This document shows, in pieces, positions 5,080 through 48,369 of a stretch of DNA of 64,000 nucleotides. Position numbers and translations under genes: made by a program. Positions within the stretch are counted from its first letter, which is position 1. Each line of letters starts with the position of its first letter. Where the stretch lies: positions 124,001 through 188,000 of the IMG/VR virus record IMGVR_UViG_3300044972_002389. The stretch is one strand, 5' to 3'. Under the pieces are notes generated by a model. That model did not search any database and was not told the DNA's origin. It was given only the letters and a program-made list of their open reading frames with translations.

Positions 5080-5451
5080 ATGACCGATGATCTCGGAAAC
5101 CTTTCTGACAATGACTTCAAGCGCCTAGTGCACCTGGTGAACGAGATCATCCACCTAAGCCACGAAGGTGCTCGAGAAGGGCAAGCTCGGGCACACGACA
5201 TCTACGCACTGTCACGAGATGCACGCGACATCTTGATCCTGGACGAAACCAGTCGGGAAGCTATGCGACGCCTCACAAATACTGAACGTCCCACCATGTA
5301 TGGGGTCACCATCAGCAAGTCTGTGGAAGACTATGTTCGTGCTGGCATGAAGATCAATGCCATCAAAGAGCTGCGAACTGAAACGGCTCTGGGCCTGAAA
5401 GAGGCCAAGGACGTTGTGGAGGCTTTTGCCAGCACAATTACGCCCTTTTAG
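5080..5451 (+). CDS. Protein with ribosomal L7/L12 C-terminal-like domain
   Basis: KINAIKELRTETALGLKEAKDVVE resembles the bL12 signature K(V/I)xxIKxVRxxTGLGLKEAKxLVE. Confidence 0.75.
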   Translation: MTDDLGNLSDNDFKRLVHLVNEIIHLSHEGAREGQARAHDIYALSRDARDILILDETSREAMRRLTNTERPTMYGVTISKSVEDYVRAGMKINAIKELRTETALGLKEAKDVVEAFASTITPF

Positions 5452-6465: not shown

Positions 6466-7677
6466 ATGAGCAAGTTCAGTTGCCCTGTGGTGCGTGTGGC
6501 CGCAGTCGAAGAACATCCGAATGCGGATCGCCTTTCTCTTGTGCGCCTTGAAGGCCTCGGTTATCTCTGCATCGCAAACAAACTAGAGGATGGTAGCCCG
6601 CGCTACAAGCCCGGTGACTGGGTCGTATACATTCCCTCAGCCTCGGTGCTGCCTGAATGGCTGCTCAAGGACATGGGATTTTGGAACGAAGACGCTGGTA
6701 AGGGTGTGCTGGCAGGCAGTGATGGCAACCGTGTGAAGCCACTCAAGCTGCGTGGTATTTTCAGCGAAGGTGTGCTGTATGGGCTCATTGCATATGGTGA
6801 TGACGATTGCCTTTCTGCTGATTTTGGGTCGGCGACGGATGTACATGTAGTAGGCAAAGACAGTCTTGAATATCCAGTCAAGCTAGGCGAGGATGCTGCT
6901 GCAATCTTGGGCATCACCAGGTGGGAGCCGCCCATTCCCGCTGCGATGTCTGGTGAAGTTGCCAGTGTTGCTGAGGCTGCTCTTACCTACGATTTTCAGC
7001 GTTGGGAGAGCGTGCCTGACATCTTCGAACCTGGTGAGGTGGTGGTGGCCCAAGAAAAAATTCATGGATCTTGTACCATCATCCAGTACTTCCCAGGCAT
7101 GGACCATCCCGAGATGTTCCCCGACCATGCAGGCTACCGCAGCATCACTGTCAGCAGCAAGGGACTAGGCGGTCAGGGTTTGGTGTTCAAGAACAACGAA
7201 GCCAACGCCAACAACCTCTATGTGCGGGCACTTGGCACACTGCTAGCCGACCATGACCTCGCCGGGCTCCTCCACAGGATGAGCAAGGTGGACGGCGGTG
7301 CTCATCCGGTGGCTATCCTGGGAGAAGTTTTCGGCAAGGGCGTGCAGGACCTCGACTACGGCACCACTAAGCCCACGTTCCGGGTGTTCGACATGCGGAT
7401 CGGGCGGGAGTGGCTAAGTCCCGATGCCGTGGCCTACTGGGCAAAGGACCTGCCCTGTGTACCTACCCTCTACACTGGCCCCTTTGACCAAACTGCCATT
7501 GAGGCTGTGAGAGACGGTGTCACAACGGTGGGTGGCACCAATGTGCGGGAAGGTGTGGTGGTGCGCAGCCTGGTTCCCACCGAGCATCCCCTGCACGGTA
7601 GGAAAATCTGCAAATTCATCTCTCCGGCGTATCTGCTCCGCCGAGTGAAGAACGGCGAGGCAACGGAGTTCAACTGA
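6466..7677 (+). CDS. RNA ligase, DRB0094/Rnl5 family (N-terminal OB/tRNA-binding-like domain)
   Basis: N-terminal HPNADRL; nucleotidyltransferase motifs EKIHG, GEVFG, FRVFD, REGVVV, KFIS. Confidence 0.9.
   Translation: MSKFSCPVVRVAAVEEHPNADRLSLVRLEGLGYLCIANKLEDGSPRYKPGDWVVYIPSASVLPEWLLKDMGFWNEDAGKGVLAGSDGNRVKPLKLRGIFSEGVLYGLIAYGDDDCLSADFGSATDVHVVGKDSLEYPVKLGEDAAAILGITRWEPPIPAAMSGEVASVAEAALTYDFQRWESVPDIFEPGEVVVAQEKIHGSCTIIQYFPGMDHPEMFPDHAGYRSITVSSKGLGGQGLVFKNNEANANNLYVRALGTLLADHDLAGLLHRMSKVDGGAHPVAILGEVFGKGVQDLDYGTTKPTFRVFDMRIGREWLSPDAVAYWAKDLPCVPTLYTGPFDQTAIEAVRDGVTTVGGTNVREGVVVRSLVPTEHPLHGRKICKFISPAYLLRRVKNGEATEFN
7582..7677 (+). repeat. Copy 1 of a 96-bp diverged direct repeat (RNA ligase 3' end)
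   Basis: Ungapped 79/96 identity to 8086-8181 (hand count). Confidence 0.9.
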
Positions 7678-7759
7678 TGCGCTACGATCTACTGGAGGTC
7701 TACTGCTGCCTATGCCCAAGTCCCTAGACATATTGATCCCAGAAACAGAAACTTTCTGG

Positions 7760-7787
7760 TTGACAATGTCCGGAACTGTGCTAATAT
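7760..7787 (+). promoter_or_regulatory. sigma70-type early promoter
   Basis: TTGACA-N16-TAATAT preceded by TGC. Confidence 0.7.
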
Positions 7788-7814
7788 GACGTATAATACA
7801 TAAAGGACTAACAA

Positions 7815-8087
7815 ATGAGCGATCTCCCCAAGCCTATGTTTGCTAACGTTGGCCGCGCGTATGTGGCTGCTGCCGCGTTGGGTCTAGACACTAGCAATCT
7901 CAGTCGTGATCGTGCTGATACTGTGCTCCGCGCGCTGGTCAAAATGCCTGGTTGGCTGGAACAAAACCTGGATGTGTATCAGATGTGGATGGCTGATGTT
8001 GACCCCTGGCATTGCTTCATCCGTGACCTGAGCGCGTACACCAAGCAAGTGCGGGCTCACACGAAAGCTACCACGCGGGCCAAGTGA
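7815..8087 (+). CDS. hypothetical protein between the two ligase 3'-end copies
   Basis: AAGGA RBS and its own promoter. Confidence 0.75.
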   Translation: MSDLPKPMFANVGRAYVAAAALGLDTSNLSRDRADTVLRALVKMPGWLEQNLDVYQMWMADVDPWHCFIRDLSAYTKQVRAHTKATTRAK

Positions 8088-8181
8088 GTATCGACTGCAT
8101 AGCAGGAAAATCTGCAAGTTCCTCTCTCCGTCATATCTTCTCCGACGGGTGAAGAACGGTGAAACAACAGAGTTCAACTGA
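8086..8181 (+). pseudogene. Copy 2: orphan RNA ligase C-terminus EYRLHSRKICKFLSPSYLLRRVKNGETTEFN*
   Basis: No start codon; diverged duplicate of the last 31 ligase codons plus stop. Confidence 0.85.
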
Positions 8182-8193
8182 GTCGGGGCCACG

Positions 8194-8472
8194 ATGACCG
8201 AAAACTATATTCTCTTGAAATGGGGCACACTCAAGGGCTATCGGGTAGCTGACAACCCTGTGGCGCAAGGTTTGATTAAACAGTACATGGAGTTGGGTGC
8301 CAGCGCCATGCACCAACAGGACACTCCCGAACAAAAACAAATCATATGCGAACTGCTGCCTGCTCTGGCGTGCCCGCGCCGTGCCTTCCCCAACCCATAC
8401 GACCCCACAGGGCTGCTGCACTGGATCGCAACCCAGGAGCCGGTCATTCTCGGACGCGACCCCGCTGGCTAG
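8194..8472 (+). pseudogene. Chimeric ORF: phage gene 5' half (to ...KQIICEL) fused in frame to the 3' end of a high-GC bacterial gene
   Basis: Abrupt GC and codon-style change at about 8355 inside the ORF. Confidence 0.65.
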
Positions 8473-9640
8473 CCGGCTGGCCATTTCAGGATGCCGCCAT
8501 GTCACGCCGCTTTCTCGTTACCGGAGGTGCCGGCTTCGTCGGCAGCCATCTCGTCGCCGCCCTGCTGGACCAAGGCGCGGAGGTGGTGGTGTTCGACAAC
8601 CTGCGCACCGGCCATCGCGAAGCCGTGCTCCCCGGCGCCACGCTGGTCACCGGCGCGCTGGAGGACCCCGATGCGATCGCGTCCGTGCTGGCGCAGGGGC
8701 CGTGGCATGCGGTGTTCCACTTCGCCGCGCTGTCGCTGGTGGGCGATTCCATGCGCGACCCGATCGGCTATCTCTCGGCCAATGTCGGCAACGGCCTGCG
8801 CCTGTTGGAGGCCTGCGTGAAGCACGGCGTGCCCCGCTTCGTGTTCTCCTCCACCGCCGCCCTGTTCGGCACGCCAGACCGCATGCCGATCGACGAGGAA
8901 ACCGCGATCGACCCCGGCTCACCCTACGGCGAAAGCAAATGGATGATGGAGCGCGCGCTGGGCTGGGCCGAACGCATCCACGGCATGCGCTCCGCCTGCC
9001 TGCGCTACTTCAACGCCGCCGGCGCCGACCCGCAGGGCCGCCTGGGCGAGGACCACACGCCGGAAACCCATCTGATCCCGTTGGCCATCGACGCCATGCT
9101 CGGCCGTCGCGCCGAACTCGCCGTGTTTGGCACCGATTACGACACGCCGGACGGCACCTGCATCCGCGACTACATCCATGTCACCGACCTCGCCGCCGCC
9201 CACCTCGCGGCGCTGGAGCGGCTGGACCACGCCAGCGTCACCTACAACCTCGGCACCGCCGCCGGGCATTCGGTGCTGGAGGTGATCCAGAGCGTGGAGC
9301 GCGTCAGCCGCCGCCCGGTGCCGCACCGCTTCGCCCCACGCCGCCCTGGCGACCCCGCCCGCCTTGTTGCCAGCCCGGCGCGGATCATGCGCGAAACCGG
9401 CTGGCAGCCGCGCCTCGCAGCACTGGATGACATCGTCGCCACCGCCCTGGCCTGGCGCGAAGCCCATCCGCGCGGCTACGGCGGATGAGTTACCGCATCC
9501 CGGCGCATCGGCCTGTGCGTGTTCTCAGAAGTGCATTTTTCACCTACTTATGTCCTCATCCGCCCAGCCGCCGCAGCGAGGACCGCCACGCCATGAGCCA
9601 GCCTGCCGCGACCACGGTCGCCAAGAACCTGGGCGCATGA
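8356..9640. other. Foreign high-GC (~70%) bacterial DNA segment
   Basis: Sampled 60-nt lines are about 75% GC against about 50% in the flanks; both ends cut genes; no transposase or terminal repeats seen. Confidence 0.9.
8499..9488 (+). CDS. galE: UDP-glucose 4-epimerase
   Basis: LVTGGAGFVGSH, FHFAALSLVGDS, FSSTAA, YGESK, LRYFNAAGA, GEDHTPETHLIP, DGTCIRDYIHV, YNLG. Confidence 0.97.
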   Translation: MSRRFLVTGGAGFVGSHLVAALLDQGAEVVVFDNLRTGHREAVLPGATLVTGALEDPDAIASVLAQGPWHAVFHFAALSLVGDSMRDPIGYLSANVGNGLRLLEACVKHGVPRFVFSSTAALFGTPDRMPIDEETAIDPGSPYGESKWMMERALGWAERIHGMRSACLRYFNAAGADPQGRLGEDHTPETHLIPLAIDAMLGRRAELAVFGTDYDTPDGTCIRDYIHVTDLAAAHLAALERLDHASVTYNLGTAAGHSVLEVIQSVERVSRRPVPHRFAPRRPGDPARLVASPARIMRETGWQPRLAALDDIVATALAWREAHPRGYGG

Positions 9641-9709
9641 CGCTGGAAGTCCTGCATGGAGTTTCCCAACCAAGAAACTTATCTGCAATGTTTGCTCACA
9701 TGGAGTTGA
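9641..9709 (+). pseudogene. 3' remnant of a Trp-rich family gene cut by the galE segment
   Basis: RWKSCMEFPNQETYLQCLLTWS* matches the family register. Confidence 0.65.
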
Positions 9710-9778
9710 CGGCATCTGTGAGTCTGTTGCGTGTGATACAATGTACCAACACCCTCTCTATGGACGGAGATAAAAAGG

Positions 9779-9806
9779 TTGACACAGTCTGTCTGTGCTG
9801 TATATT
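9779..9806 (+). promoter_or_regulatory. sigma70-type early promoter
   Basis: TTGACA-N16-TATATT. Confidence 0.7.
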
Positions 9807-9830
9807 GAAGCTACACAAGGAGAACAACAA

Positions 9831-10313
9831 ATGGAAGCCACGCCTGATCTAGCTGTCTACGTGCTGGCCCGAACTGATCTGCCCAGTATGAACCCAGGAA
9901 AGCTGGCTGCACAAGTACATCATGCTGGAACCCAGATGATGAGCCTATTTGCAGATCATCCACTAGTTCAACAGTATGTTGCCGACGGTGTCTCACAAGG
10001 TGCCTACTACTTCAACACCACAATTGTGCTGGGTGCCACAATGGACCAGCTTCATGGTCTGAGATGCACTTATGGTTGGGAATACCACCTCACTGTCAAG
10101 GGGTCAGTCGTCGACCCCAGCTACCCATTTTTTGTGGAAAATCAAGAGGTAGCTGATCTTGTTGCAGCTAATGGCAAGGCAGCTGTCATCAAAACCATGG
10201 ATGATGGGCGTGTGCTGATGACTCGCCAAGAGACCACTTGCATTTGGTGCCTTGTGGATCGCAACAAGCCCGAAGTTTCAGACATTCTAGGCCATCTCAA
10301 ACTCTATCCCTAA
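9831..10313 (+). CDS. Peptidyl-tRNA hydrolase type II (PTH2)-like protein
   Basis: VYVLARTDLPSMNPGKLAAQVHHA matches the PTH2 N-terminal signature; AAGGAG RBS. Confidence 0.7.
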   Translation: MEATPDLAVYVLARTDLPSMNPGKLAAQVHHAGTQMMSLFADHPLVQQYVADGVSQGAYYFNTTIVLGATMDQLHGLRCTYGWEYHLTVKGSVVDPSYPFFVENQEVADLVAANGKAAVIKTMDDGRVLMTRQETTCIWCLVDRNKPEVSDILGHLKLYP

Positions 10314-10331
10314 CAACAAAGGACACTGCCT

Positions 10332-10460
10332 GTGCTATTGCTGATTGAACTCATCGGTGCTCTGGTGCTCATTGGCGTATGTGCCTATGGTGCCAGCAAA
10401 CTGATCGAAAGTTTCTACGATCGCAACCGAACCCCTCCCGACCGCAAGGACCCCAACTGA
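10332..10460 (+). CDS. small single-pass membrane protein (42 aa, not in the ORF track)
   Basis: GTG start; LLLIELIGALVLIGVCAYGA hydrophobic stretch; abuts the SPFH gene. Confidence 0.6.
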   Translation: MLLLIELIGALVLIGVCAYGASKLIESFYDRNRTPPDRKDPN

Positions 10461-10461
10461 T

Positions 10462-11382
10462 ATGTGGAATCAACCTCCGCGTGACTCCAATCCTCGAATC
10501 AACCCTCTACAGGAGACTCCCCGAGTGAACGCTCGATTCATCGCTACCATGGTAGGTGGCGCAATGGCTGCTCTGCTGGCACTCACAGTGATCCTCGGCA
10601 GCTGGTACACAGTTGATGAGCGTCAGCGCGGTGTGCTGCTCCGCAACGGCAAGCTGGTGAGCGTGGTGCAGCCAGGGCTGGGATTCAAAATCCCCTTCAT
10701 CGACAATGTGGTGCTCATGAGCACCGAGACCGTCCTGCTGCGACTGGACAAGGAAGCGGTCTACAGCCGAGACCAGCAACCTGCAACTATCACCTTCTCG
10801 GTGAGCTGGCGTGTGAGCGAAGACAATGTGGACGATGTCTACAAGGAGTTTGGCGGGCTCCGAGGAGTTCAAGACCGTGTGATCCTGCCGGGTGTGCGTG
10901 ACGAGCTCAAGAACGTAATGGGTCGCTACAACGCAGTCACAGCGATTCAGGATCGCACCCGACTGGGCACAGATGTCAAGGCGGCCATTGTGGCCAACAT
11001 CAAAGGGCCGTTTGTGATCGAGAATCTGGCTATTGAAAACATTGATTTCAGTGACGCTTACGAAAAATCCATCGAACAGCGAATGCTCGCGGAGGTGGCT
11101 GTTGAAAGAGATCGACAGGATGCGATCCGAGAGAAGGTGCAGGCTGAAATTGTTGTAACCAAAGCGCAGGCCGAAGCTGATGCAGTCAAGGCACGAGCTG
11201 GAGCTGAAGCTGAAGCTATCCAACTGCGCGGCGAAGCTGAAGCCAAGGCCATCCGGGCCCGAGGCGATGCACTTCGCGCGAACGCAGAGCTAGTCACACT
11301 TACGGCTGCAGAGCGATGGGACGGTAAGCTCCCTACCACTATGGTCCCAGGTGCAGCACTGCCCTTTGTGCATGTGAAGTAA
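10462..11382 (+). CDS. SPFH/band-7/prohibitin domain membrane protein
   Basis: TM helix, then YTVDERQRGVLLRNGK, PGLGFKIPFID, coiled-coil AEAEA repeats, WDGKLP. Confidence 0.92.
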   Translation: MWNQPPRDSNPRINPLQETPRVNARFIATMVGGAMAALLALTVILGSWYTVDERQRGVLLRNGKLVSVVQPGLGFKIPFIDNVVLMSTETVLLRLDKEAVYSRDQQPATITFSVSWRVSEDNVDDVYKEFGGLRGVQDRVILPGVRDELKNVMGRYNAVTAIQDRTRLGTDVKAAIVANIKGPFVIENLAIENIDFSDAYEKSIEQRMLAEVAVERDRQDAIREKVQAEIVVTKAQAEADAVKARAGAEAEAIQLRGEAEAKAIRARGDALRANAELVTLTAAERWDGKLPTTMVPGAALPFVHVK

Positions 11383-11388
11383 TCAAAC

Positions 11389-11416
11389 AGAAAGGTGGGT
11401 GAAAGCTCACCTTTCT
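11389..11416 (+). terminator. stem-loop, probable terminator
   Basis: AGAAAGGTGGG-tgaaag-CTCACCTTTCT. Confidence 0.55.
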
Positions 11417-11418
11417 CC

Positions 11419-11446
11419 TTGACAAAAGTGTCAAACCCGCTAAATT
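11419..11446 (+). promoter_or_regulatory. sigma70-type early promoter
   Basis: TTGACA-N16-TAAATT preceded by GC. Confidence 0.65.
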
Positions 11447-11450
11447 ACAG

Positions 11451-11636
11451 ATGTTGATAAACCAAGTGAGCTATCCACACATGACCGAAGATCAGATTGA
11501 GCGTACCGTGGAACGTGCAACAGATCGCCTGGACGAGCGTTATATGCGAGGGGAGATCAGCCGGGCACGCTATGCTGATGAAGCTGACAAGCTGAGTACA
11601 TGGGCTGAACGCGAGTATCGCAGGGCGCGTCGGTGA
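11451..11636 (+). CDS. hypothetical protein
   Basis: ORF behind a promoter; GTGA overlap with the next gene. Confidence 0.6.
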   Translation: MLINQVSYPHMTEDQIERTVERATDRLDERYMRGEISRARYADEADKLSTWAEREYRRARR

Positions 11637-12255: not shown

Positions 12256-13030
12256 CACGGATGTGCAGACTCTGTATGTTGTGGGTGTTGCAAAGGAGAC
12301 GGATATGCGAATTGATGTGCCCAGCATCGTAAATGATCCCCAGATGAGAACCTTGCCCTATTGGCTGGAGGTATATCCCAATCAGGATCAAGCTCGCCGG
12401 GCTCGAGCACTGGCTCGCAAGGCGTATGATCGCACACGGCTAGCTGAGGTGCAGCGTTGGCGCTGCTGCTGGTGTCACTGCGAGATGCGTGGCGAACAAG
12501 GCTTCAAGAACAGTGCCACCATTGAGCACATCACTCCTCGCAGTTGTGGTGGCACTGACCACATCACCAACTTGGCTGTGGCGTGTGGCCGATGCAACAA
12601 CCGTCGAGGCAACACGCCCTGGGAAGATTTCCTGCAGGCTATGGAAATGAGTCGGCCCGCGCCTGAGACTGGCAGCTTTCGCTCACTGGCTTTTGAACGT
12701 AAGATGCGCCGAGAGGCTGCTGAGCAGAACAAGCGCATCAAGCAGTTGACTCATTTGGTGCGCAACCACGAGGTGCAAGCCACTGCTACTCAAACGCGAC
12801 GCGAACAGTGCAAGTCACTGGAAGCCCAATACTCAGACATGCTGCCAGGATTGCAGCTGGCTGGTTTCCAACGAGCCAAGAGGATGCGTCGCGAAGTTGA
12901 CCGTCAACTGGCACTGCAAGCCCTCTCACAAAAGGTCAGCAACCCTTTTGAAGTGGACAGTCGGCCCTGGCGCATCTACGAGCGTATGCGTAACAAGCAG
13001 AGTGTTGACACACTGCAAGCAGCCGCTTAA
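12248..13030 (+). CDS. HNH endonuclease-domain protein with a long helical C-terminus
   Basis: CCWC...ATIEHITPRSCGGTDHITNLAVACGRCNNRRG. Confidence 0.85.
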   Translation: MVDTDVQTLYVVGVAKETDMRIDVPSIVNDPQMRTLPYWLEVYPNQDQARRARALARKAYDRTRLAEVQRWRCCWCHCEMRGEQGFKNSATIEHITPRSCGGTDHITNLAVACGRCNNRRGNTPWEDFLQAMEMSRPAPETGSFRSLAFERKMRREAAEQNKRIKQLTHLVRNHEVQATATQTRREQCKSLEAQYSDMLPGLQLAGFQRAKRMRREVDRQLALQALSQKVSNPFEVDSRPWRIYERMRNKQSVDTLQAAA

Positions 13031-13033
13031 ATA
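13028..13033 (+). promoter_or_regulatory. putative T4-type late promoter (TAAATA)
   Basis: TAAATA 5 nt before the ATG at 13039. Confidence 0.45.
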
Positions 13034-13038
13034 AGGTT

Positions 13039-13332
13039 ATGAAAAGGTTCCTTGTTGCATTCATGTTGCTGTCCTCCAGTCCCTGTTGGGCGCAAGGATA
13101 CCACTACCGCCCCTATGGCTATACTCCTGCGCCTCACTACCGCCACCATCACCATAACCACGGTGGCGGAAACTGGGTAGCCCCTCTTGTAGGGGGCATT
13201 GTTGGCGGTGCAGTGTTGGGCGCTATCATTGCACCAAACATCTATGCTCCTGCACCAGAGCCCATTTGCACTGATAGGCTAGTGGGATATGATGTTTATG
13301 GTCGTGCCGTTGTGGAACGTTTTTGTAGGTAA
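13039..13332 (+). CDS. secreted/membrane His-Tyr-Pro-rich protein with a glycine zipper
   Basis: Signal peptide MKRFLVAFMLLSSSPCWA; HHHHNHGGG; GGIVGGAVLGA. Confidence 0.7.
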   Translation: MKRFLVAFMLLSSSPCWAQGYHYRPYGYTPAPHYRHHHHNHGGGNWVAPLVGGIVGGAVLGAIIAPNIYAPAPEPICTDRLVGYDVYGRAVVERFCR

Positions 13333-14402: not shown

Positions 14403-15620
14403 ATGCACTACACGTTTCCCGAGATCACGCACCTGGATCAAGTGCTGGAAGCTGTCCAGGGTGTGGAAGGCTTCATTGTAGCCCAGCGGCCCTGGGGCAC
14501 TGTGGTCAACTACATTCAGATGGGCCCGGACATGTTCCCCGAGGTCCATACTGCTGGAGGCAGCGCCAGCATGCGCGAGCGGCAGACTCGACTCAAGGCT
14601 ATCCGCCGGGAGTGTAGGGGGCTGCTGTTCAGCCTTGATGGAAAGTTGGTGAGCCGCGCATTTCAGAAGTTTTGGAACGTGGGCGAACGGCGCGAGACTT
14701 TGATTGAAAACATCGATCTCACTCAGCCACACATCATCCTTGAGAAGTTGGATGGAAGTATGATTCGTGCTCTACCTCTAGGTAAGGGCTACTGTCTTGC
14801 AACCAAGATGGGGCCCACTGCTGTAGCAGCACAGGTTGAGCCGTTCGTGGCAACTCGAGACAACTATGACCGATTTATCCGAGACACACTGGAGCAGGGA
14901 TACACTGCCTGTTTCGAGTGGTGTACTCGTCAACAAAAGATTGTGTGTGATTATCCAGTTGATCGACTGGTGCTGACTGCTGTGCGTCACATCAACTCGG
15001 GTGAGTATCTCACCTACTCTCAGATGCAGGAACTGGCGGCCGAGTATGAGCTGGATCTAGTCAAGGCCTATCCTGGTACTGTGGCTAGCATGGAGCAGCT
15101 CGTTCGGGAGACGCATGAGCTGGAAGGCGAGGAGGGGTGGATCATCCGGTGGGATGATGGACATATGGCCAAGTTGAAATCGGCCTGGTATGTGCGTATC
15201 CACCGTGCCAAGGATGCTCTCACGCAGGAGAAGAACCTCATCGACCTCATGCTGGCGGAAAAGCTGGACGACGTCAAGAGCTTTCTGCCTGTGGAGGACC
15301 TGGCTCGCATCGACGCCTACGAGAACGCCTTCTGGACGGGTGTGGGGCAAACTGCCTACATATGGAAGGACCAGTATGTCAAGCTCCGGCGGCAGTTTGG
15401 TGACGATAGAAAGCGGTTTGCACTGGAGGCAGCACCGGGTCTTGAGCCCAACCTGCGTAGTGCTGTGTTCAAGGTCTGGGCCCGTGAGGGCCACGTGGAC
15501 TGGCGTGAGCTGGTGTGCGATGTGATCCGCAAATGCACTGGCACGCAGACCCGGGTGGACGAGGCACGCTCACTGTTCCGTGCGCCGCGGTGGAGCCAGC
15601 AAAGTGTGGGAGACGAATGA
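14403..15620 (+). CDS. T4 Rnl1-like RNA ligase
   Basis: FQKFWN, EKLDGSM, FEW, EGWII, AKLK. Confidence 0.9.
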   Translation: MHYTFPEITHLDQVLEAVQGVEGFIVAQRPWGTVVNYIQMGPDMFPEVHTAGGSASMRERQTRLKAIRRECRGLLFSLDGKLVSRAFQKFWNVGERRETLIENIDLTQPHIILEKLDGSMIRALPLGKGYCLATKMGPTAVAAQVEPFVATRDNYDRFIRDTLEQGYTACFEWCTRQQKIVCDYPVDRLVLTAVRHINSGEYLTYSQMQELAAEYELDLVKAYPGTVASMEQLVRETHELEGEEGWIIRWDDGHMAKLKSAWYVRIHRAKDALTQEKNLIDLMLAEKLDDVKSFLPVEDLARIDAYENAFWTGVGQTAYIWKDQYVKLRRQFGDDRKRFALEAAPGLEPNLRSAVFKVWAREGHVDWRELVCDVIRKCTGTQTRVDEARSLFRAPRWSQQSVGDE

Positions 15621-26126: not shown

Positions 26127-27359
26127 ATGAAAAAGTTATCCTTACATAGTATAGTAGTTTTGATTGGTCCCACTAAGAGTGGCAAAAGCACATGGGCCCA
26201 AAACCAGTTTGACGCTGATGAAATCATAAGCCTTTCTTCAATCAAGAAAGAGTTGACAGGCAACAATTCAACAGTGGATATTTTGCCAAATATTTGGCAC
26301 GAACTCTATCGTAGAGTTGATATTCGTATCGCCAACGGGCAACGTGCAGTAGTTGATTCCACTAATCTAAAAGACAAGGACAGATTTACTTTTCTTGATA
26401 TTGCCGAAAAGTATGGTGTGGAAGTCTATTACAAACCTTTTGACCTTGAATGGGGCACAATACAGCAAAACTCTGGTTCTTGTTATGACTTTGACTCTTT
26501 GAGAAAAAGCTATAGTATATGGAAAAATGCTCGCACACAGGTGTTACAGGGCGATAATAAACGAGCTGTTGTGCTGTGTGGTGACGAAACCACTGTTGGA
26601 TTTCCAAATGAATTGCAGAGTGCAAGGATTTTAGCAGTAGGCGATGTTCATGGCAATTTTCCAGCTATGCAGCAGGCAGTGCAAATGGCACAACAGTTAC
26701 ACGCAAAGCTAGTGTGGCTGGGAGATATTGTGGACTATGGCGCCAATAATCTCAAATGTTTGAAACTTGCATATGACACTGTTCGAGACGGGCAAGCACT
26801 TATGATTTGGGGAAATCACGAAAGAAAAATTGATCGCTGGATTAGGAGCGACTTGGGTGAAACCTTTAATGGCAAACTTAGCGAGTCAAATCTATCTACT
26901 ATAAGAGAAATCAACAGTTTGAATGACTTGCGGAAAAAGAAGTTTCTTGCAGCTTGGACAGCACTAAGAAACTGGAGTTTTAACCACCTAACAGTGGGAA
27001 AATTTTTGTTTACTCATGGTGCAGCAACACCTGCCATGTGGGCCAACAAGGATCGCAGATTGCAAGGTGTTTGTGCAAATATGGCCTATTTTGGTGAGGT
27101 AGACACTGTTTCACCGACCAAGAATGATGGATATCCAAACCGTATCTGGAATTGGGTTCAAAACATACCTGCTGATCATACTGTTGTTGTAGGGCATGAT
27201 TGGCTTGATCGTGTCAGTTACAACGTTGTGGAAAAAGCAAATTCTTGTGGCGGCCGGGCATTTGTTACAGATTGTGGTAGCAGCAAAGGCGGTCGTTTGG
27301 GTGCACTTTTTGTTGATCAACATAGCAAAGAAGTTTTGCCTTACTATTTTGACACTTAA
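26127..27359 (+). CDS. Polynucleotide kinase-phosphatase (P-loop kinase plus calcineurin-like phosphoesterase; Pnkp-like without a ligase domain)
   Basis: GPTKSGKS, VVDSTN; GDVHG, GDIVDYG, GNHE, THG, VVGH. Confidence 0.85.
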   Translation: MKKLSLHSIVVLIGPTKSGKSTWAQNQFDADEIISLSSIKKELTGNNSTVDILPNIWHELYRRVDIRIANGQRAVVDSTNLKDKDRFTFLDIAEKYGVEVYYKPFDLEWGTIQQNSGSCYDFDSLRKSYSIWKNARTQVLQGDNKRAVVLCGDETTVGFPNELQSARILAVGDVHGNFPAMQQAVQMAQQLHAKLVWLGDIVDYGANNLKCLKLAYDTVRDGQALMIWGNHERKIDRWIRSDLGETFNGKLSESNLSTIREINSLNDLRKKKFLAAWTALRNWSFNHLTVGKFLFTHGAATPAMWANKDRRLQGVCANMAYFGEVDTVSPTKNDGYPNRIWNWVQNIPADHTVVVGHDWLDRVSYNVVEKANSCGGRAFVTDCGSSKGGRLGALFVDQHSKEVLPYYFDT

Positions 27360-32935: not shown

Positions 32936-32942
32936 TATTTAT
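32936..32942 (-). promoter_or_regulatory. late promoter ATAAATA
   Basis: Overlaps the stop of the 4017-aa gene. Confidence 0.55.
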
Positions 32943-35900
32943 GCTGGTATCGACCCAGGTTGTGACAACAAAAATTGAGCTTGGTAAGTGCTGCTATATT
33001 GTAGCCCTAGTCCACCATAAGGCCACTGATACCCACCTGGGATAACTTGCCGCACACTACCATCTCGCACTACGCTGGTAGTTGGGTGAGACATAGCTGT
33101 TGTTTTCCAGTCTTGTTTGAAGATTATAAGTCCAATATTTTTATTGCCTGCAGGAGGTGGTTCAAAAATTGGAGCCAATGTCTGAGAGGGGAATTGCAGA
33201 TAAAATCCAGGGGCTGCATTTGAGGGGTTGCTTACTAGCATCCAATCGTTTTGGAGCTTGCCATCCACAATAACATACGCATTTACCATTCCTGCTTGCC
33301 ATTCTCCTGCGTTTGTAATAGTTACAGGATACAAATCACTGTTGCCTGTGCTACTCCAATACTGTGCCACAAATTTATCACTAATGCCGCCAGGTGTTCC
33401 CAGTGTGCCACGATTGATTTTTCTCAAAACAGCTTGGTTAGGAAATGCAGTTGAGGCCGCAGGAGCTTTGTCAAAATATTCAATTCTTTCACCCTCAATC
33501 CAAATAACCCCAGGTCGTTTGTCATCAGGTTCAAGAAGAGTGTCGCCATTTGCTACAAAAATTTCCTGATCATTCCAGTTCAACACCTGAGTAAGAACGG
33601 TCCTGTCCTGATTCCCAAGGCGTAGGTATTGTGTGTCGTTATACACATTTGTCACAGCACGGAATGCAACACCATCTTTGCTGGGCAACGCTGTGGGATA
33701 ATAGGCTTGAATCTCATCAGCTGCTGTCAAAGTGTAATGATTTCCTAACTTTAGGTACCAACTGTTTCCGGTTTTGACTATGGTATAGTCTAAAATCCAG
33801 CTTAAGCTACTGCCGTTGAGCCATACTTGCACACTTTGGAACTCCAACGGAGTATTGGTGAATAGGTATTGGTTGCTGGAATCACCTGTCCAGACATCGT
33901 TATAAAAGGCACTTGCGCTGTCTTCACCCCAAGTTCTTACAACAATAGTATCGCCGTCAACCACCGCCCAACTTGCCAAAAGTAGGTTTGTTCCTTGGAT
34001 TTGATAATCATAGTTTTGGGCGACTGGATCAGCCACTTCAATGTAAATGAAACTTTTATCTGATGGCGCTGTAGTGAATATTATTTGATTTCCAGCCAAT
34101 GTATATTCTGTGTTAGGCAATACTGAGGCATTTAACCAAACTTGAATAAATGACCCAGGATCTGGGAAAATAGCCAAATTATATGCTGTTGTGTTGTTGT
34201 CACCAATTGCACTCAAAAGGTAGGGTGGCTTCAATCGCTTGCCGTTACTGTAGACCAGTGCATTGTTACTTTGTGCAGGATTGAATCCGCTCAAGGGATT
34301 ATTTGGTGTATTCAAATTCAGCGGATACGTGAGCAATGGCAAGGTTACTACCAAACTCTGTAATTTTTGTAGACTTTGATATTGACTGCTGTATACCAAA
34401 ATTACAATAGTGTCGCCAGGCAAAGGTGTAAATCCCAGTCCAATTTGACGATTGTCGGCAGGGTTTACACCAAAACTCACTGTAGGCACTCCATTCCAAG
34501 TCATCAGAATAGTGTTAGCGCCTATGGGTTGATCCATTGTGATCACAAAACTTGTGATGTCAAAAACAACAGTTTTAGTTTCTTGAATATGGCTGGAATA
34601 GTTAGCAATGCTGAACCCTGTGCCAGTACCAGGTGCTCCACCACTTATGGTTACACCCACTTGTTGGAGGCCAACATTCTTATTCAAATAACTACCACGA
34701 GTCAACGGCAAGATGCTGGCTACTCCCCATTGTGGAGTAATCAACCCTCCTATACCTGTTCCATTTGTATACCATTCATTTTGACTTATGCTGGGCTGAG
34801 TATAATAGCCTTGATTTACAATACTCACAGCAGTAATTTGTCCAGCTACACCACCAAAAGCAGTAGTGCTGTCAACCTTGATTACCAAAGTTTGCGTTCC
34901 GCTCCCGTATTTGAAATACAAGAGATCTCCTACCTTGTAGCCAGATCCTGGCTGATTTACATTTACAGCAGTTGCACGTATTGCAGTGACTAACACTGTT
35001 GTAGATGTGTAGCTCTGTGATGTATCACTTAACACGATAGTATCGTTCAAGTTGTAATCAATTCCTTGATTTACTATGCTCCAATTTCCGAGACCAGGGG
35101 TTGCTCCACCAAAACCAAAGCTGGTAATTACAACTGATCCCACTGGCGGGAAAACAAAAACAATGCTATTGCTGCTGGGATCATATACATAATCAGAGGT
35201 TGGTCCTAGAGTTTTCAAAATTCCGCCTACACTGACAATAATGTCAGCAGCACTGAACACTGGTTGGCCAATATAAAATCTATCAGTAATGCTGTCGCCA
35301 AGCCAACTTTCAGACAACACATTCCCAAAGCCCACTGTGGGTTGATTGGCAACATCTATTATCAAGGTTTCTTTTCCTTGAAGCGGGAACAACTCTTCAG
35401 GATGATTGCCTTCCACATGTGGTCGACTCAACCCCTGTCCATCATATACAGCATCAAGCGTGCCTCCTAGGGCACTTTCAAATGTGCTGCCTGCTTCTGC
35501 TACCCAAATGTTGGGTTTGGCTACAGCACTAAGTGGCGCCAGTGCAAATTCAAGACTTGTGCCGCCCCAACGTAGGACAAAGGTGGCATTTACGCCTGAA
35601 CCGCCAGAGGCTTGCACTGCTGTTCCACTGGGAGTCAGTGTGTATGCCCCTGGAAAGACCACCTCAATTTTCAAAATTGCACCTGTCAAACTTGTGTTGA
35701 CTACTTTCAGCTGAGCAGGAATAGTATAAGTGCCTCCAGATACAGAGAGTATATCATTTACACTATATCCTAATCCTTGATTAGCAACATCCACAGCAGT
35801 TATCCAGTTTTTGACTGTCCAATTGAGAGGAGTGTTTTGAAGATTACCATTTACCCAAACACGCAAGTCATTTGGAGCTTGTGGGGCCTGAGGCAGGGCA

Positions 35901-38900
35901 AACTTTGTTTGCAGCCCGTCCCCTTTGAATACCCAATATTGTGGCCTTGCTCCACCATTTATGTATTGATCAAATAACCGATCAACTTCTTGGCTAGTGT
36001 TGTCCCAGCCCAATACGCCATCCCACACTGGCTCGCCCCAACGACCATTTAGATTGAAATCCAAACCATCCAACACTGTTCCTTTGGGAGCACATCCACT
36101 GATCAGTAAGGGATCATTTGGAGGAGGCATGCTAGGAGTGGGCTGATACAACTGTTGAATTCTGTCTGCTGCTCCGTTATCCAGTTGATATCCAACCAAT
36201 TCAAATATGCCTTGATTGAACACAAACAAACTCCAAAGCCCAATGTTGTCGTAAATTACTTTGATTATTTCTCCATTAGGCAAGTTTGTCAGAGCTTTCA
36301 TTTCTTCGATAGTGTCAATAAACCTATTTGGCACAGTATTCTCGCTGTATCCAGGACTGTAATAGTCTTCTGCGGGCACACACGCCAGTCGGTCCAACAC
36401 AATTTTTGTCCTTGTGCTGCGTACACTGAGGTTTGCTATATCAAATACAGTCACAGTAACAATATCTCCAACACCTGGTGTGAAGTTGAGTTCAACGAGA
36501 GTGCTGTCGTCTAAATTTATCTCATAATCATTAGTTAATAAGTTGTTCCATCGAACTTGTGTAAATTGCCAAGTTATGGGATTTGTCATGCTTACTATTT
36601 GAGAAATGCCGTCACCAATAAATGTCTTACGCTCAAGATAGCTAGATGCGTATACATACGCCTGCACAACATCGTTAGTGTTAGGCACAAAGACCAAATC
36701 AATTATTGAGTTGTCTCCAGGACGCAAATTCCAAGCTTGAGAAAGCTTGCTATTCCAGTATACCAAAACATTTTCAGGTTTGGTGCTAGTGCTTAGTTGA
36801 AGAGATTTGGTTGATCCGTTACCAGTTAAGGTCACTGTTTCAATCAATGCACCACTGCTGGCTTTGTAGTTGTCGTACCACGGCTTGTATATGGTATCTC
36901 CGGACAAAATCGCAAGATCAACTGGGTTACTGACATTCAAGATTGAAACATTATTGTTCAGGTCAATATAGGGAGGGTTATCCAAATCGCTGCTGTTGCT
37001 TTCCCAATAGTCCGAGACCACTCTGTAATCCACAAATTGGCGTATGACAACGTGGTAGGGTTTAACCTCTTGAATATATTTTTCCAAGCTGTCTATTTTA
37101 CTTGGGTCATAATAGGCTGAACTCAAGAGTTGTTGGCTGAAACCTTTCAAATTGATAAAGCTTGTTTTGAAACACCAATCTACGAAATTTTGTTCAGCCA
37201 GCACATGGCTCACTAGCTCAAAAAATACCATGTTACGTTCATTTACATCACTGTCAACTTTCAAAAGTCCCACAGCTTTGTTGTTTTCAGGCCACAATCC
37301 CTGCAAAATATAGCTCAATTCTAGGCGTGTATCATACTCCCAACCTTGATAATCAACTGCATAACTTCCTCCACTGAAGCCCATGCTGTACTTTTCGTAG
37401 TCATAGAGATTGTCACTGAGTTGTAGATTGCCGTTTTGTACACCTACTACGGTCCATAAGGTTTCAGAATCAGGCGTGTATTCAAAAAGATTCCAACGGC
37501 CATTGCCTGTATTCAACACTTTGACCAAAGTTCCAGAGTCAACCACAAGAGTGTCACGGTCAGCCAAAGTGGCAACAGTAGCCCCAATCAGGGTGTCGGC
37601 ACTGATGCCGCTGGCATACCAATCTACCAAGTACCAAACTTGGTTAGTGTCCCATGCTTGCATACGCTCTAATGAAAACTGGTTTTGTCCTTGATAAAGC
37701 CAAATGGTCCAGCGGTTGTTGGTGGCAGCACTTACATCTACCAAAACTTTGTTACCAGGTATTAGGCTGGGAATCAAAGCATCTCTTGCCGCCAAAGTAG
37801 CTACGTAATAATCCCAATTGCAGGGCAATATGCCTTTTACTGGCCGTACAATTTGCCACTCTAGGGGATCAATTCCCAATTTCAAAATGTTCTTGTTGTT
37901 TTGAATATAGGTTGTTGGCAATAGCTGTGATGCACCTTCCAAAACCAACACTTGTGCATCTATTAGGTTGTCATCTATGCTGTCAAAATCTGCAGACCTC
38001 ATCAAGATCCATGGATTGTTGAGCGAGCCAATGTCCACTACATCATAAATTCCATTTTGATTAGGTGTTTGTGTGACAATAGAGCTGGTAAGAGTAACTG
38101 GATTTTGATTTTTAACAATTATTCGGTCTCCCAAATTTACTGTTATACCATCAACAACCAATGCACTATAAGATGAGCCATTATAGGTTAAGGTAGCACC
38201 CTTGCCATTTTCCCCAGGATAGTAAACAGTGTCTAGAGCAGTTGTGGTTGCCACTCGAGCATTGGCTTTGGTATTTTTTTGGAGAGGCTGTGGCTCTACG
38301 CTCTGAAAATACTGTAACCAGCCAAGCCTGTCAGGGTCATCCAATGGCGGCACACTGCTGCTGCTAAGGAGGCTGTTGATTTTTTTAACAAAAGCTCTCC
38401 TAGCAGTAATACCATCCTTGAACCAACTTTGTGAAGGTCGTGTCAGCATGCCATACTTGCTCATTTCAGGCAGTCGCAAATTGGGAACACTGTTGCCTAC
38501 GTTGTTGAATTCCACAAGACTATCACACATTTTGCTCCACAAATCTAGTGTAGGTGTGCTCAAAGGATCGTTGGGTCTCAACAATGTCCACTCTTTGTAG
38601 ATTTTATCTACATTTTCTCTACTTGTATAATTCACTTGCCAGACAGTGTTGTTTTCATCCAAGAAACTGCCAATGTTTGCTAACAATGCGCCTGTGCTGC
38701 TGATTGCGGCCCACCAGCTTTGGTTTTGTGTTTGTGGACTTTCAACAATTTGACTCAAAGATGCAACACTTATCTTGCGATCTGGCACGTTGGGCACTGT
38801 GGTTTTGTTTTTTACCCAAAAGTAATAGGCATTTGTGTATTGGCCGCTTTCATTACGCTCACTTGCCAACACGTAGGGATAATCAGCACCTTTTACTGAT

Positions 38901-47900: not shown

Positions 47901-48369
47901 TAAATTGTTCAAACCAATCAGGGTTGTTTGCATCATTCCAAATAACAGGCACATTGGCTAGATTGAAACCATTGGAGTCATAGATATTTTGATCAGTGAT
48001 TACTTGAGTTAACTTAACCAAACCCTGTGCAGCAATACAGCGTCGTGGGTTGTAGGAAATCAGCCTGGCAAGGCGAAAAATACTGTCACGTCGGGTAGCA
48101 GTATCGATGAAATTTTCCCGAATATTCAGATCCAAACGGAATGCCAAACTGGATGCCAAATAAGCCAAAAGTTCAATTATTGCGACAAATTCGCTGCTTT
48201 CAATCCAGTCGTTGAAATCTTCTGGATAATTCAAGCGGATGTAATCAATCAAAGCTTGGCGGATAGTATCATAGTCATAGGCATTAAAATTTACCTGACT
48301 CATGGCTTGATACAGCACACGCCAATCTTGTCCAAGGAATAAATTATTTTGTCGGAGGCTTTGACTCAT
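44989..48369 (-). CDS. Baseplate wedge subunit (T4 gp6-like)
   Basis: DFNDWIESSE..AIIELLAY...ENFIDTATRRDSIFRLARLISY, FSDGNFG, RMVNGEDY. Confidence 0.88.
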   Translation of the reverse strand: MSQSLRQNNLFLGQDWRVLYQAMSQVNFNAYDYDTIRQALIDYIRLNYPEDFNDWIESSEFVAIIELLAYLASSLAFRLDLNIRENFIDTATRRDSIFRLARLISYNPRRCIAAQGLVKLTQVITDQNIYDSNGFNLANVPVIWNDANNPDWFEQFILVLNASFSKVNPFGQPVKSGAVNGLTVERYDLDNTVTRTLAFPFTGVVNGQQMNFEFVNTDFVNSVSGSITVGSAGYYREKTPNYIQPWSVLYRNDGNGNASPDTGFFGLFKQGTLSFTDFVLSEPLSNRVLDLTALNVNESDVWVETVDDQGNTLVEWTKVPALFGTNIAYNSLNRSTRDIFQVITRDISGTDSISIKFSDGNFGNIPVGRIRVYFRTSNNLTYTILPQDISSVPLSLSYYRDNDGTSQNLLQMQFDLQSSVANSLSRESNAFIRERAPAVFYSQNRMVNGEDYNVYPLISSQALKIKSVNRVYSGQSRYIDINDPTSTYQNSKVFSDDGILFEEEHETYIEVPNSLNVNNTQILDTYIQPLIQGSVDSRKINTDMRDFYLAKYPKRGGGNIQWTNQNPSNTVFPNAHFYTQTVDFVLALPDTTYGIRKGSYLFFANGTSSYLVDEGNSVSSAGNAIISSFVPNGTMLSSVIPSFKDVLLSAEKDAVKNALDEKLSFGISYIQLTGMWQIISTSNLAVDADFSLAQQGNTANQNLDASWLIQLKYVPGFGWYITSRGLKYVFESVNDVRFYTINTSPVISSNTGLANQDFVKILRVNTNLATNLSFSQDWFWPIASQQLYPDGYIEPRRVQVRFQDSNFDGIVDNPDEFKVIVDPDREQQIDLDTGLITGSSFPYVFWKTTVINGFDYLTPTTVDKIFTDLISMSTKYPPNPLSWNDGEVAYVRDQKLFFKYQFSNNSLIDVTPSYKAAVGRNDLNYCWQHFIDKGKRVDPAIMNIIDTYVLTSSYDTAMRNWIARGKTTDPMPQPPAPEDLRITFAEFDTYKMMTDQLIWHPVKYKLLFGQSADPELRVSFKVVKNSGVSITDSEIKARIIRDIDNYFSIANWDFGQSFFFTELAAYIHQQNPAILNSLVIVPQNQNSSFGDLFEIKCQPDEIFISSARVTDILIVPSLNQTELRLK

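What the first reader, a model, noticed from the sequence alone, without database searches (positions are those of the whole stretch)
8356..9640. 1.3-kb ~70% GC bacterial segment with an intact galE spliced between two broken phage genes
Seen in sequence: GC jumps from about 50% to about 70% at ~8355, inside ORF 8194 (phage-like 5' half fused in frame to a foreign gene's tail). It drops back at ~9640, where the start of another foreign gene (MSQPAATTVAKNLGA) abuts the tail of a Trp-rich family gene. There is no integrase, transposase, terminal inverted repeat or target duplication. Established knowledge: GalE interconverts UDP-Glc and UDP-Gal. Inference: either a very recent illegitimate-recombination capture of host DNA, which would reveal a high-GC host (possibly alphaproteobacterial), or an assembly chimera. 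Because the two flanks belong to different genes, phage DNA was replaced rather than simply interrupted.
Basis: partly seen in the sequence, partly recalled or inferred. Interest (0 to 1): 0.75.

Follow-up and report, generated by a model that had tools for sequence, protein, structure and literature searches.

The report
Host galE captured by lake jumbo phage
A 1.3-kb piece of bacterial chromosome carrying an intact sugar-nucleotide gene (galE) really is built into a giant lake-water phage; it was taken fairly recently from an Acetobacteraceae-like bacterium and survives in several trimmed versions, which is an ordinary kind of event caught unusually fresh.

Summary
The GC jump is real. Window 8358-9649 (1,292 bp) is 69.8% GC, 4.6 sd above the rest of the 133.7-kb record, and is its only such island. 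It is not an assembly artefact: at least 10 independent assemblies (contigs up to 328.6 kb) and 18 lake-water runs carry both junctions. The piece is collinear with about 5-Mb, 70%-GC freshwater Acetobacteraceae-like MAGs (97.5% identity overall, 98.5% from 8480). It holds the tail of an upstream gene, an intact galE (TIGR01179, 388 bits), the intergenic region and four codons of a glycosyltransferase. A sister phage with an empty site shows that about 327 bp of phage DNA were replaced. The junctions show only 2-6 nt of microhomology and no mobile-element features. Related phages share the right junction but have two other left junctions. One relative carries a longer version at a second locus. 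galE is intact in every form, while its bacterial neighbours are always truncated. Best reading: a host-derived auxiliary metabolic gene, kept by selection and recombining among co-circulating jumbo phages. Expression and function are inferred, not shown. The kind is known, since galE is a common viral auxiliary gene. The value is the freshness and the host link.

The parts
6466..7677 (+). Phage RNA ligase (Rnl2-like) gene. It is the left anchor of the variable locus.
   Evidence: Pfam RNA_ligase 1e-18. Conserved in all sister phages.
7760..7787 (+). Sigma-70-like promoter (TTGACA-16-TAATAT with TG). It is the nearest consensus promoter upstream of galE on the same strand.
   Evidence: No terminator-like site on the + strand between it and galE.
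7815..8087 (+). 90-aa phage gene of unknown function.
   Evidence: Present in all sister phages.
8194..8472 (+). Chimeric 92-aa ORF. The first 55 or so codons come from an 88-aa phage gene. The tail comes from the bacterial gene upstream of galE and ends at the bacterial stop codon.
   Evidence: Alignments. tblastn. The 88-aa gene is intact in L027, L010, L037 and L039.
8358..9649 (.). The captured bacterial segment: 1,292 bp, 69.8% GC.
   Evidence: 97.5% identical to MAG locus L020 and 96.9% to L023 over 8358-9647/9655. z = 4.6 for GC.
8358..8472 (+). 3' remnant of the bacterial 353-aa gene upstream of galE. It carries a 10-nt deletion between GCGCCG direct repeats (at 8376-8381) relative to the bacteria and to L009.
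8499..9488 (+). Intact galE (UDP-glucose 4-epimerase, 329 aa) with the bacterial ribosome-binding region (AGGA 8-11 nt before the ATG).
   Evidence: TIGR01179 388.3 bits against a cut-off of 262.3. Pfam Epimerase 4e-57. Full-length match to the solved GalE 2c20, 1e-93.
9489..9637 (+). Bacterial galE-glycosyltransferase intergenic region. It includes a 26-nt block (9533-9558) that is invariant even in bacteria only 83% identical overall.
   Evidence: No Rfam match. No fold beyond shuffles, z = +0.69.
9638..9649 (+). First four codons of the bacterial family-2 glycosyltransferase gene.
   Evidence: River RNA-run contigs of the donor run on from 9647 into the glycosyltransferase.
9650..9709 (+). 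3' remnant (about the last 17-19 codons plus the stop) of a small Trp-rich phage gene that is intact in the empty-site phage L027.
9779..9806 (+). Sigma-70-like promoter (TTGACA-16-TATATT) of the next phage unit (PTH2-like gene, 9795-10313).

Best explanation
Window 8358-9649 is a genuine piece of bacterial chromosome inside the genome of a tailed jumbo phage from lake water. Sister contigs reach 328.6 kb, and CheckV rates this 133.7-kb record as 30% complete.

The donor is a freshwater, 70%-GC, roughly 5-Mb Acetobacteraceae-like alphaproteobacterium. In that bacterium galE sits between a 353-aa gene and a glycosyltransferase cluster.

The piece entered by illegitimate recombination. The junctions show only 2-6 nt of microhomology, and no mobile-element machinery is present. 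It landed in a small Trp-rich gene within a plastic region of short phage genes.

Later deletions trimmed the useless bacterial and phage DNA around galE. Probable recombination with other phages and with the host's own galE produced several junction forms. The window's form has lost about 327 bp of phage DNA and fuses a truncated 88-aa phage gene to the tail of the bacterial upstream gene.

Inferred, not shown: galE is kept because it is useful to the phage as an auxiliary metabolic gene. It would be transcribed by read-through from the phage promoter at 7760-7787 and translated from its own bacterial ribosome-binding site. It would interconvert UDP-glucose and UDP-galactose in the infected cell. 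The most likely purpose is to feed phage-directed glycan synthesis or to remodel the envelope polysaccharide.

My sub-confidences: real capture 0.97; donor lineage 0.9; donor lineage is a host 0.75; galE expressed and selected in the phage 0.65.
For: Real, not assembled by mistake:
- The exact GalE protein sits in the same phage context in JGI, ENA, NCBI and Logan assemblies.
- L003-L008 and L014-L017 are 99.5-100% identical across both junctions.
- Eighteen lake-water runs hold 89-100% of the words of 7900-10100.
- One Logan contig (16.5 kb, depth 75.6) spans 6500-11500 without a difference. In a second run two contigs of equal depth (15.7 and 15.1) each bridge one junction.

The record is a phage: baseplate wedge, tail fibre, ThyX and RNA ligase genes.

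Donor:
- Six MAG loci of uniform 70% GC are collinear over at least 5 kb.
- L020 is 97.5% identical over 8358-9655 and 98.5% over 8480-9647.
- In the 60 kb of the window searched, nothing else matches these MAGs beyond weak short hits.

Empty site: L027.

Other forms:
- B and E at this locus share the window's right junction.
- A longer piece with an internal 1.09-kb deletion sits at a second locus in relative L009.

Selection:
- galE is intact in all forms, while both bacterial neighbours are always truncated.
- dN/dS is 0.03-0.16 in all pairs.
- GalE passes the curated equivalog cut-off and keeps the GxxGxxG, SST and YGESK motifs.

Other sugar genes: relatives and the phage itself encode further sugar-nucleotide enzymes. 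These are an SDR and a GT2-like gene next to the second locus, and Gmd plus a DegT aminotransferase at this locus in L036.
Against: - There is no evidence of expression. No RNA run was listed for the phage flank. The two RNA runs that hold galE hold the bacterial version.
- No consensus promoter lies inside or directly before the segment.
- The low dN/dS may largely reflect evolution in the bacteria before capture. Only 5-14 substitutions are specific to any one phage copy.
- Phage GC is 47% against 70% in the putative host. This is an unusually large gap for a phage-host pair.
- No CRISPR spacer or second shared segment links phage and MAGs.
- The order of events among the forms is not resolved. 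The ML tree has 35-52% support. The mosaic test gives p = 0.036-0.14.
Confidence: 0.82

Rival explanations
1. Assembly chimera: reads of a co-occurring high-GC bacterium were wrongly joined into the phage contig.
For: The sequence comes from a metagenome. The donor bacterium lives in the same kind of water. One Logan assembly breaks inside galE at a stretch shared with other galE genes.
Against: The same two junctions occur base for base in at least 10 assemblies made by different pipelines from different samples, on contigs up to 328.6 kb. A chimera would not place an insert inside a contig with phage DNA on both sides. It would not recur with three different left junctions in diverged sister phages. 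Contig depth is the same on both sides of the break.
Confidence: 0.01
2. Neutral passenger: the bacterial piece is real but useless to the phage. It would be a recent accident that has not yet been deleted, and galE would not be expressed or selected.
For: No promoter of its own. No transcript evidence. An empty-site relative exists. The low dN/dS could be inherited from the bacterial past.
Against: Deletions have repeatedly removed DNA on the left side of galE. These comprise a 10-nt deletion in the window, a 1.09-kb deletion in L009, and trimming to 33 or so and 20 nt before the ATG in forms E and B. None of them enters the 990-bp ORF. The gene is present in every form at two loci. The galE-carrying form was read on 17 contigs and is indexed in 40 blocks of the collection. 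Phage-specific changes are mostly synonymous: 4 of 5, 6 of 8 and 12 of 14.
Confidence: 0.13
3. History variant: the copies at the two loci (this locus in forms A, B and E; the second locus in L009) are independent captures from the same host lineage. The alternative is one capture that later moved between phages.
For: All four end points differ. L009's arms are longer on both sides. The window's copy is closer to bacterial L020 (17 differences) than to L009 (35) or to forms B and E (20-23). The tree does not make the phage copies a clade.
Against: All phage copies share 9347T. Forms B, E and C share 8939G and 9086G. None of these states is seen in any of the five bacterial sequences. The window's closeness to L020 is concentrated in 8771-9248, as expected from a later conversion by a host allele.
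Confidence: 0.35
4. Reverse direction: the bacteria acquired galE from the phage.
For: None beyond the shared sequence.
Against: The segment has the bacteria's base composition, not the phage's. The gene order (353-aa gene, galE, glycosyltransferase) is conserved in bacteria down to 83% identity. The phage copies hold truncated fragments of the bacterial neighbours.
Confidence: 0.01

Closest known systems
Virus-encoded galE as an auxiliary metabolic gene. It was reported as the third most abundant such gene in Baltic Sea water-column viruses (PMC9301287). It was also reported among the NAD-dependent LPS-pathway genes of jumbo phages (PMC11662467).
   Same: A host-type UDP-glucose 4-epimerase gene lies inside a phage genome with viral genes on both sides. 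The proposed role is in nucleotide-sugar or envelope-polysaccharide metabolism of the infected cell.
   Different: Here the transfer can be read directly. The donor lineage is 97-98.5% identical. The composition is not ameliorated. Fragments of both bacterial neighbour genes remain. An empty site exists, along with several junction forms.
Morons of lambdoid phages: extra genes of foreign composition inserted between phage genes (own knowledge of the concept).
   Same: One extra gene of deviant GC sits between co-oriented phage genes and is absent from a close relative.
   Different: A classical moron brings its own promoter and terminator. None was predicted inside this segment. Phage DNA was replaced, not merely separated.
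Lambda dgal specialised transducing phages (own knowledge).
   Same: Host gal DNA is joined to phage DNA by illegitimate recombination, with loss of phage DNA.
   Different: That route needs a prophage integrated beside gal and gives defective particles. Here no integrase or prophage lies beside the bacterial galE. The insert is 1.3 kb, lies inside a genome of at least 328 kb, and is fixed in a circulating phage population.
Hyperplastic regions of T4-type phages, where small genes are shuffled between relatives (own knowledge).
   Same: The locus consists of short co-oriented genes with consensus early-type promoters. Identity between relatives is mosaic, from 50% to 100% per 100 nt. Gene content is variable: a nucleotidyltransferase, homing endonucleases and Trp-rich paralogs come and go.
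   Different: No repeated regulatory cassette bounding the galE piece was found. The cargo comes from the host chromosome rather than from another phage.

Membership tests
UDP-glucose 4-epimerase GalE (TIGR01179 equivalog; SDR superfamily) | Whole-protein score above the curated equivalog cut-off. | tested here: met
   388.3 bits against a cut-off of 262.3, over residues 5-326 of 329.
UDP-glucose 4-epimerase GalE (TIGR01179 equivalog; SDR superfamily) | N-terminal GxxGxxG NAD-binding motif and the catalytic Ser plus Tyr-x3-Lys. | tested here: met
   GGAGFVG, SST and YGESK align with the same motifs of the solved GalE 2c20. Which residues are catalytic is from my own knowledge of SDR enzymes.
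UDP-glucose 4-epimerase GalE (TIGR01179 equivalog; SDR superfamily) | Epimerase activity on UDP-Glc/UDP-Gal. | not testable with these tools
   Needs an enzyme assay or complementation of a galE mutant.
Viral auxiliary metabolic gene | A metabolic gene of cellular type inside a bona fide viral genome, with viral genes on both sides of the same contig. | tested here: met
   Baseplate, tail fibre, ThyX and RNA ligase genes lie on the same contig. The same context occurs on contigs of 133-328 kb.
Viral auxiliary metabolic gene | Expressed during infection and beneficial to the virus. | not testable with these tools
   No RNA run was listed for the phage flank. The RNA runs with galE hold the bacterial form.
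Moron | Own promoter and terminator flanking the extra gene. | tested here: inconclusive
   The consensus scan finds none inside 8358-9649. The scan covers only sigma-70 consensus promoters and simple terminators.
Transposon, insertion sequence or integron cassette | Terminal inverted repeats, target-site duplication, and a transposase or integrase. | tested here: not met
   No repeats at the ends. No such ORF nearby. The junctions share only 2-6 nt with the parents.
Specialised transducing phage (lambda dgal type) | Prophage integration site adjacent to the captured host gene. | tested here: not met
   The bacterial loci around galE are collinear in six MAGs, of uniform 70% GC and without phage DNA.

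The most novel reading that the evidence does not exclude
The galE piece is a live exchange module rather than a frozen insert. On this reading it was captured from the host, moved or was captured again at a second locus, was trimmed step by step, and spread between co-circulating jumbo-phage lineages on a 98-100% identical block. That block sits in flanks that are otherwise 75-90% identical. The phage copy is also repeatedly overwritten by recombination with the host's own galE during infection. This would make it a natural system for watching an auxiliary gene being born and domesticated. If the samples do belong to the two-decade lake time series, which I infer but did not show, the process could be followed over time. 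The piece would also tie a phage of at least 328 kb and 47% GC to a 70%-GC host.
Probability: 0.4. Interest if true: 0.6.

Novelty: new member of a known kind. Interest (0 to 1): 0.45.

Why it matters
Phage-borne galE is common in viromes, but its origin and purpose are usually guesswork because the copies are old and ameliorated. This case differs in four ways:
- The donor lineage, the empty site and the exact break points are all visible.
- A series of deletion and recombination derivatives survives.
- The derivatives give direct evidence of how a jumbo phage picks up and then streamlines a host gene.
- They also argue that galE itself is what is being kept.

The segment gives a concrete host hypothesis for an uncultured phage of at least 328 kb: a freshwater Acetobacteraceae-like lineage, despite a 23-point GC gap.

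The phage and the donor-like MAGs occur in lake metagenomes. One of these MAGs is labelled as coming from the Lake Mendota series. If the phage samples belong to the same densely sampled series, the frequencies of the forms could be followed through time.

Tried and rejected
- **Public phage records:** near and distant DNA searches found nothing useful.
- **Metagenome contigs:** a scan for the conserved 26-mer found nothing. That collection apparently lacks these samples.
- **IMG/VR relatives:** searches with the PTH2-like protein and with an RNA-ligase alignment gave only the same phage, one empty-site relative and one distant relative.
- **L006 argument dropped:** I first thought the variant L006 (40 mismatches, none in galE) showed a younger insert. 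All its mismatches lie at 12847-13113, so it shows nothing.
- **Tree:** an ML tree of the segment is unresolved among the close copies, with UFBoot 35-52.
- **Mosaicism test:** a two-breakpoint maximum chi-square test is only suggestive, p = 0.036-0.14.
- **Structured RNA:** Rfam gave no credible match, and the fold of 9486-9660 is no better than shuffles.
- **Host link:** a search of five donor-like MAGs with 60 kb of the window found no spacer-like or other recent match.
- **L009 record:** the whole record is not held, so I could not see whether its first locus is empty.
- **Promoter in form B:** the TTGACA-containing spacer before galE in form B does not pass the promoter scan, so I do not call it a promoter.
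- a protein search of the L12-like gene failed on my wrong coordinates. I then dropped it as uninformative for the host question.

Full report
**1. What the window is**

The window is the minus strand of bases 54819-118818 of a 133,672-bp IMG/VR virus record. The record is classed as linear, and CheckV rates it 30% complete. It encodes a baseplate wedge protein, tail fibres, ThyX, two RNA ligases and a kinase-phosphatase. Sister contigs with identical sequence reach 309.8, 326.2 and 328.6 kb. It is therefore a tailed jumbo phage. The runs that hold it are labelled lake water metagenome. One donor-like MAG is titled as coming from Lake Mendota. Each sample of that time series has its own BioProject, which fits the run list. 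The link of this particular sample to that series is my inference.

**2.

- GC rises to 0.64-0.75 between about 8350 and 9650.
- The segment 8358-9649 is 69.8% GC. Other windows of the same length in the record have mean 46.8% and sd 5.0%, so the segment lies at z = 4.6.
- It is the only such island in the record.
- galE occupies 8499-9488. Its GC3 is 0.88.
- ORF 8194-8472 is a fusion of a phage gene head with a bacterial gene tail.
- There are no terminal repeats, no target duplication and no recombinase gene.

**3. It is not an assembly chimera**

- The exact GalE protein was read on 17 contigs, all in the same phage neighbourhood. They come from JGI, ENA, NCBI and Logan assemblies of different samples.
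- Ten fetched loci are 99.5-100% identical to the window across both junctions.
- Eighteen DNA runs hold 89-100% of the sampled words of 7900-10100.
- In one run a single 16.5-kb contig (depth 75.6) covers 6500-11500 with no difference.
- In another run two contigs of equal depth (15.7 and 15.1) each bridge one junction. They meet inside galE, at a stretch shared with other bacteria's galE.
- These are contigs, not raw reads, so depth is a contig mean. The junction test by read pairs remains to be done.

**4. The donor**

A 26-nt block of the intergenic region downstream of galE (9533-9558) fetched six bacterial MAG loci. Five of them align over the whole piece.

- They are uniformly about 70% GC and collinear with one another over at least 5 kb.
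- They belong to genomes of about 5 Mb.
- L020 (an Alphaproteobacteria MAG from Lac Pavin) is 97.5% identical to window 8358-9655.
- L023 (a Rhodospirillales MAG) is 96.9% identical. Three MAGs labelled Acetobacteraceae or 'Asaia' are about 90% identical.
- Over 8480-9647 the window is 98.5% identical to L020.
- The bacterial gene order is a 353-aa gene, galE, an intergenic region, a 943-aa family-2 glycosyltransferase and a family-4 glycosyltransferase. This looks like an envelope-polysaccharide locus.
- The phage piece holds the last 37 codons of the upstream gene, galE, the intergenic region and four codons of the glycosyltransferase.
- Two river metatranscriptome runs hold only 8388-9647 and run on into the glycosyltransferase. 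They show the donor bacterium, not the phage.
- In the 60 kb of the window searched, nothing else matches these MAGs beyond weak short hits.

**5. The empty site and what was replaced**

L027 is a 20.6-kb IMG/VR contig. Its flanks are about 86% identical to window 6481-8357 and 9654-11382. In place of the bacterial piece it has 327 bp. Those 327 bp hold three things:
- the 3' third of an intact 88-aa gene;
- a spacer;
- most of a small Trp-rich gene that ends in MEFPNQETYLQCLLTWS.

The window keeps codons 1 to about 55 of the 88-aa gene and the last 17-19 codons of the Trp-rich gene. At the left junction the parents share only 'GC' (8358-8359). No clear microhomology is visible at the right junction. 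This is what illegitimate recombination looks like.

**6. Other forms at the same locus**

| Form | Loci | State of the phage genes | Start of bacterial DNA |
|---|---|---|---|
| E | L038-L044 | 88-aa gene intact; most of the Trp-rich gene kept, now with a frameshift | about 33 nt before the galE ATG |
| B | L010-L013, L037 | 88-aa gene and spacer kept | 20 nt before the ATG |
| A | the window | 88-aa gene truncated | 141 nt before the ATG |

- Form B looks like form E after a deletion between two CCATT/GCCATT repeats.
- All three forms share the same right junction, to the base. That junction was therefore made once.
- Form A cannot be derived from E or B by deletion, and they cannot be derived from it.
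- Two explanations remain. All three may descend from an ancestor with a longer left arm by independent deletions. Alternatively, form A arose when an E/B-type phage recombined with a host chromosome: homologously inside galE and illegitimately upstream.
- The second explanation fits the site pattern. The window agrees with bacterial L020 at 14 of 16 informative sites in 8771-9248, and with forms E and B at the right end.
- The test is only suggestive, with permutation p = 0.036-0.14. The tree is unresolved.
- Between forms A and B, identity is 98-100% from about 8200 to 9800 and falls to 75-90% further out. This is the footprint of a block exchanged between phage lineages.

**7. A second locus**

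L009 is the end of a 177-kb contig. It is a relative of this phage: its flanks match bases 46.2-53.4 kb of the record, outside the window, at 80-94%.

- There a longer bacterial piece replaces about 940 bp of phage DNA, namely the end of an 80-aa gene and three small genes.
- The piece runs from 162 nt before galE to 303 nt after it. It also includes a 53-nt fragment from about 1.09 kb further upstream in the bacteria.
- The original capture there was therefore at least 2.6 kb and has since lost the inside of the upstream gene.
- This second locus lies next to a native low-GC SDR gene, purN, a GT2-like gene and an FkbM-type methyltransferase.
- All phage copies share 9347T. Forms B, E and C share 8939G and 9086G. 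None of these states is seen in the five bacterial sequences. This mildly favours one capture followed by movement. Independent capture is not excluded.

**8. Is galE kept for a reason?**

Shown:
- The 990-bp ORF is intact in every form, while every neighbouring bacterial fragment is truncated and has been trimmed further on the left side.
- The protein passes the curated GalE equivalog model. It aligns over its full length with solved GalE structures, with the cofactor and catalytic motifs in place.
- dN/dS is 0.03-0.16 for all pairs. Changes specific to a phage copy are mostly synonymous.

Caveat: much of that divergence may predate capture.

Inferred:
- Expression is by read-through from the promoter-like site at 7760-7787. 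No terminator-like site lies in between on this strand. Translation would start from the bacterial ribosome-binding region.
- The role is supply of UDP-galactose (or removal of it) for phage-directed glycans or envelope remodelling. A distant relative carries Gmd and a DegT aminotransferase at this same locus, so sugar-nucleotide cargo is a recurrent theme.
- The literature lists galE among the commonest viral auxiliary genes and in jumbo phages. The proposed roles there are carbohydrate metabolism or LPS change against superinfection.
- No transcript evidence could be obtained.

**9. Host inference**

A phage can only pick up DNA from a cell it is in. The copies are 97-98.5% identical to one bacterial lineage, and at least one copy seems to have recombined with it again. 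That lineage is therefore probably a host; I put this at about 0.75.

Against this stand the 23-point GC gap and the lack of any spacer or second shared segment.

**10. Verdict**

The thing is a new, unusually fresh and well-documented member of a known kind: a host-derived auxiliary metabolic gene in a jumbo phage. It is not a new kind of element.

Noticed in passing
window 7582-7677 and 8086-8181: The last 96 nt of the RNA ligase gene recur 504 nt downstream at 82% identity, after the 90-aa gene. The same duplicate is present in sister phages L010 and L027. It looks like the scar of an older cassette exchange that used the ligase 3' end as its anchor.
   Followed up: partly
window 32939-44992 (- strand): A single 4,017-aa ORF lies directly upstream of (ahead of, on the - strand) the 1,126-aa baseplate wedge gene (44989-48369). 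It is probably a giant structural or fibre protein.
   Followed up: no
window 9533-9558; L002, L018-L023: A 26-nt block in the bacterial galE-glycosyltransferase spacer is invariant in bacteria that are only 83% identical overall. It is retained in all phage copies. It has no Rfam match and no significant fold. It may be a regulatory site of the glycosyltransferase operon.
   Followed up: partly
L036 4379-6684; L037 909-1937; L043 570-1598: In a distant relative the RNA ligase gene is split by about 1 kb of low-GC DNA carrying an endonuclease-like ORF on the other strand. Two closer relatives have a NUMOD3 homing-endonuclease gene right after the ligase.
   Followed up: no
L036 7284-10775: Five tandem paralogs of the small Trp-rich gene are followed by GDP-mannose 4,6-dehydratase (TIGR01472, 468 bits) and a DegT-type aminotransferase of phage-like GC. 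This is the same locus that holds galE in the window.
   Followed up: partly
window 5080-5451: A 123-aa phage protein has a ribosomal L7/L12 C-terminal-like domain. A 77-nt stretch of it is 76-77% identical to a locus in all five donor-like MAGs.
   Followed up: no
window 6466-7677, 9795-10313, 14403-15620, 26127-27359; L010 5846-7781: The region is rich in RNA-repair and tRNA-related genes: Rnl2-like and Rnl1 ligases, a kinase-phosphatase and a PTH2-like hydrolase. Relatives add a Thg1-like and an HD_4 protein.
   Followed up: no
L039 about 1880-1900 (form E): The 5' remnant of the Trp-rich gene left in form E has a run of A6 where the intact gene has A5. The frame is therefore broken, as expected for a gene already disrupted by the insert.
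   Followed up: partly
window 8388-9647 in RNA runs X19 and X20: River metatranscriptome contigs of the donor bacterium run from galE into the glycosyltransferase gene. This suggests read-through transcription in the bacterium, or DNA carried over into the library.
   Followed up: no
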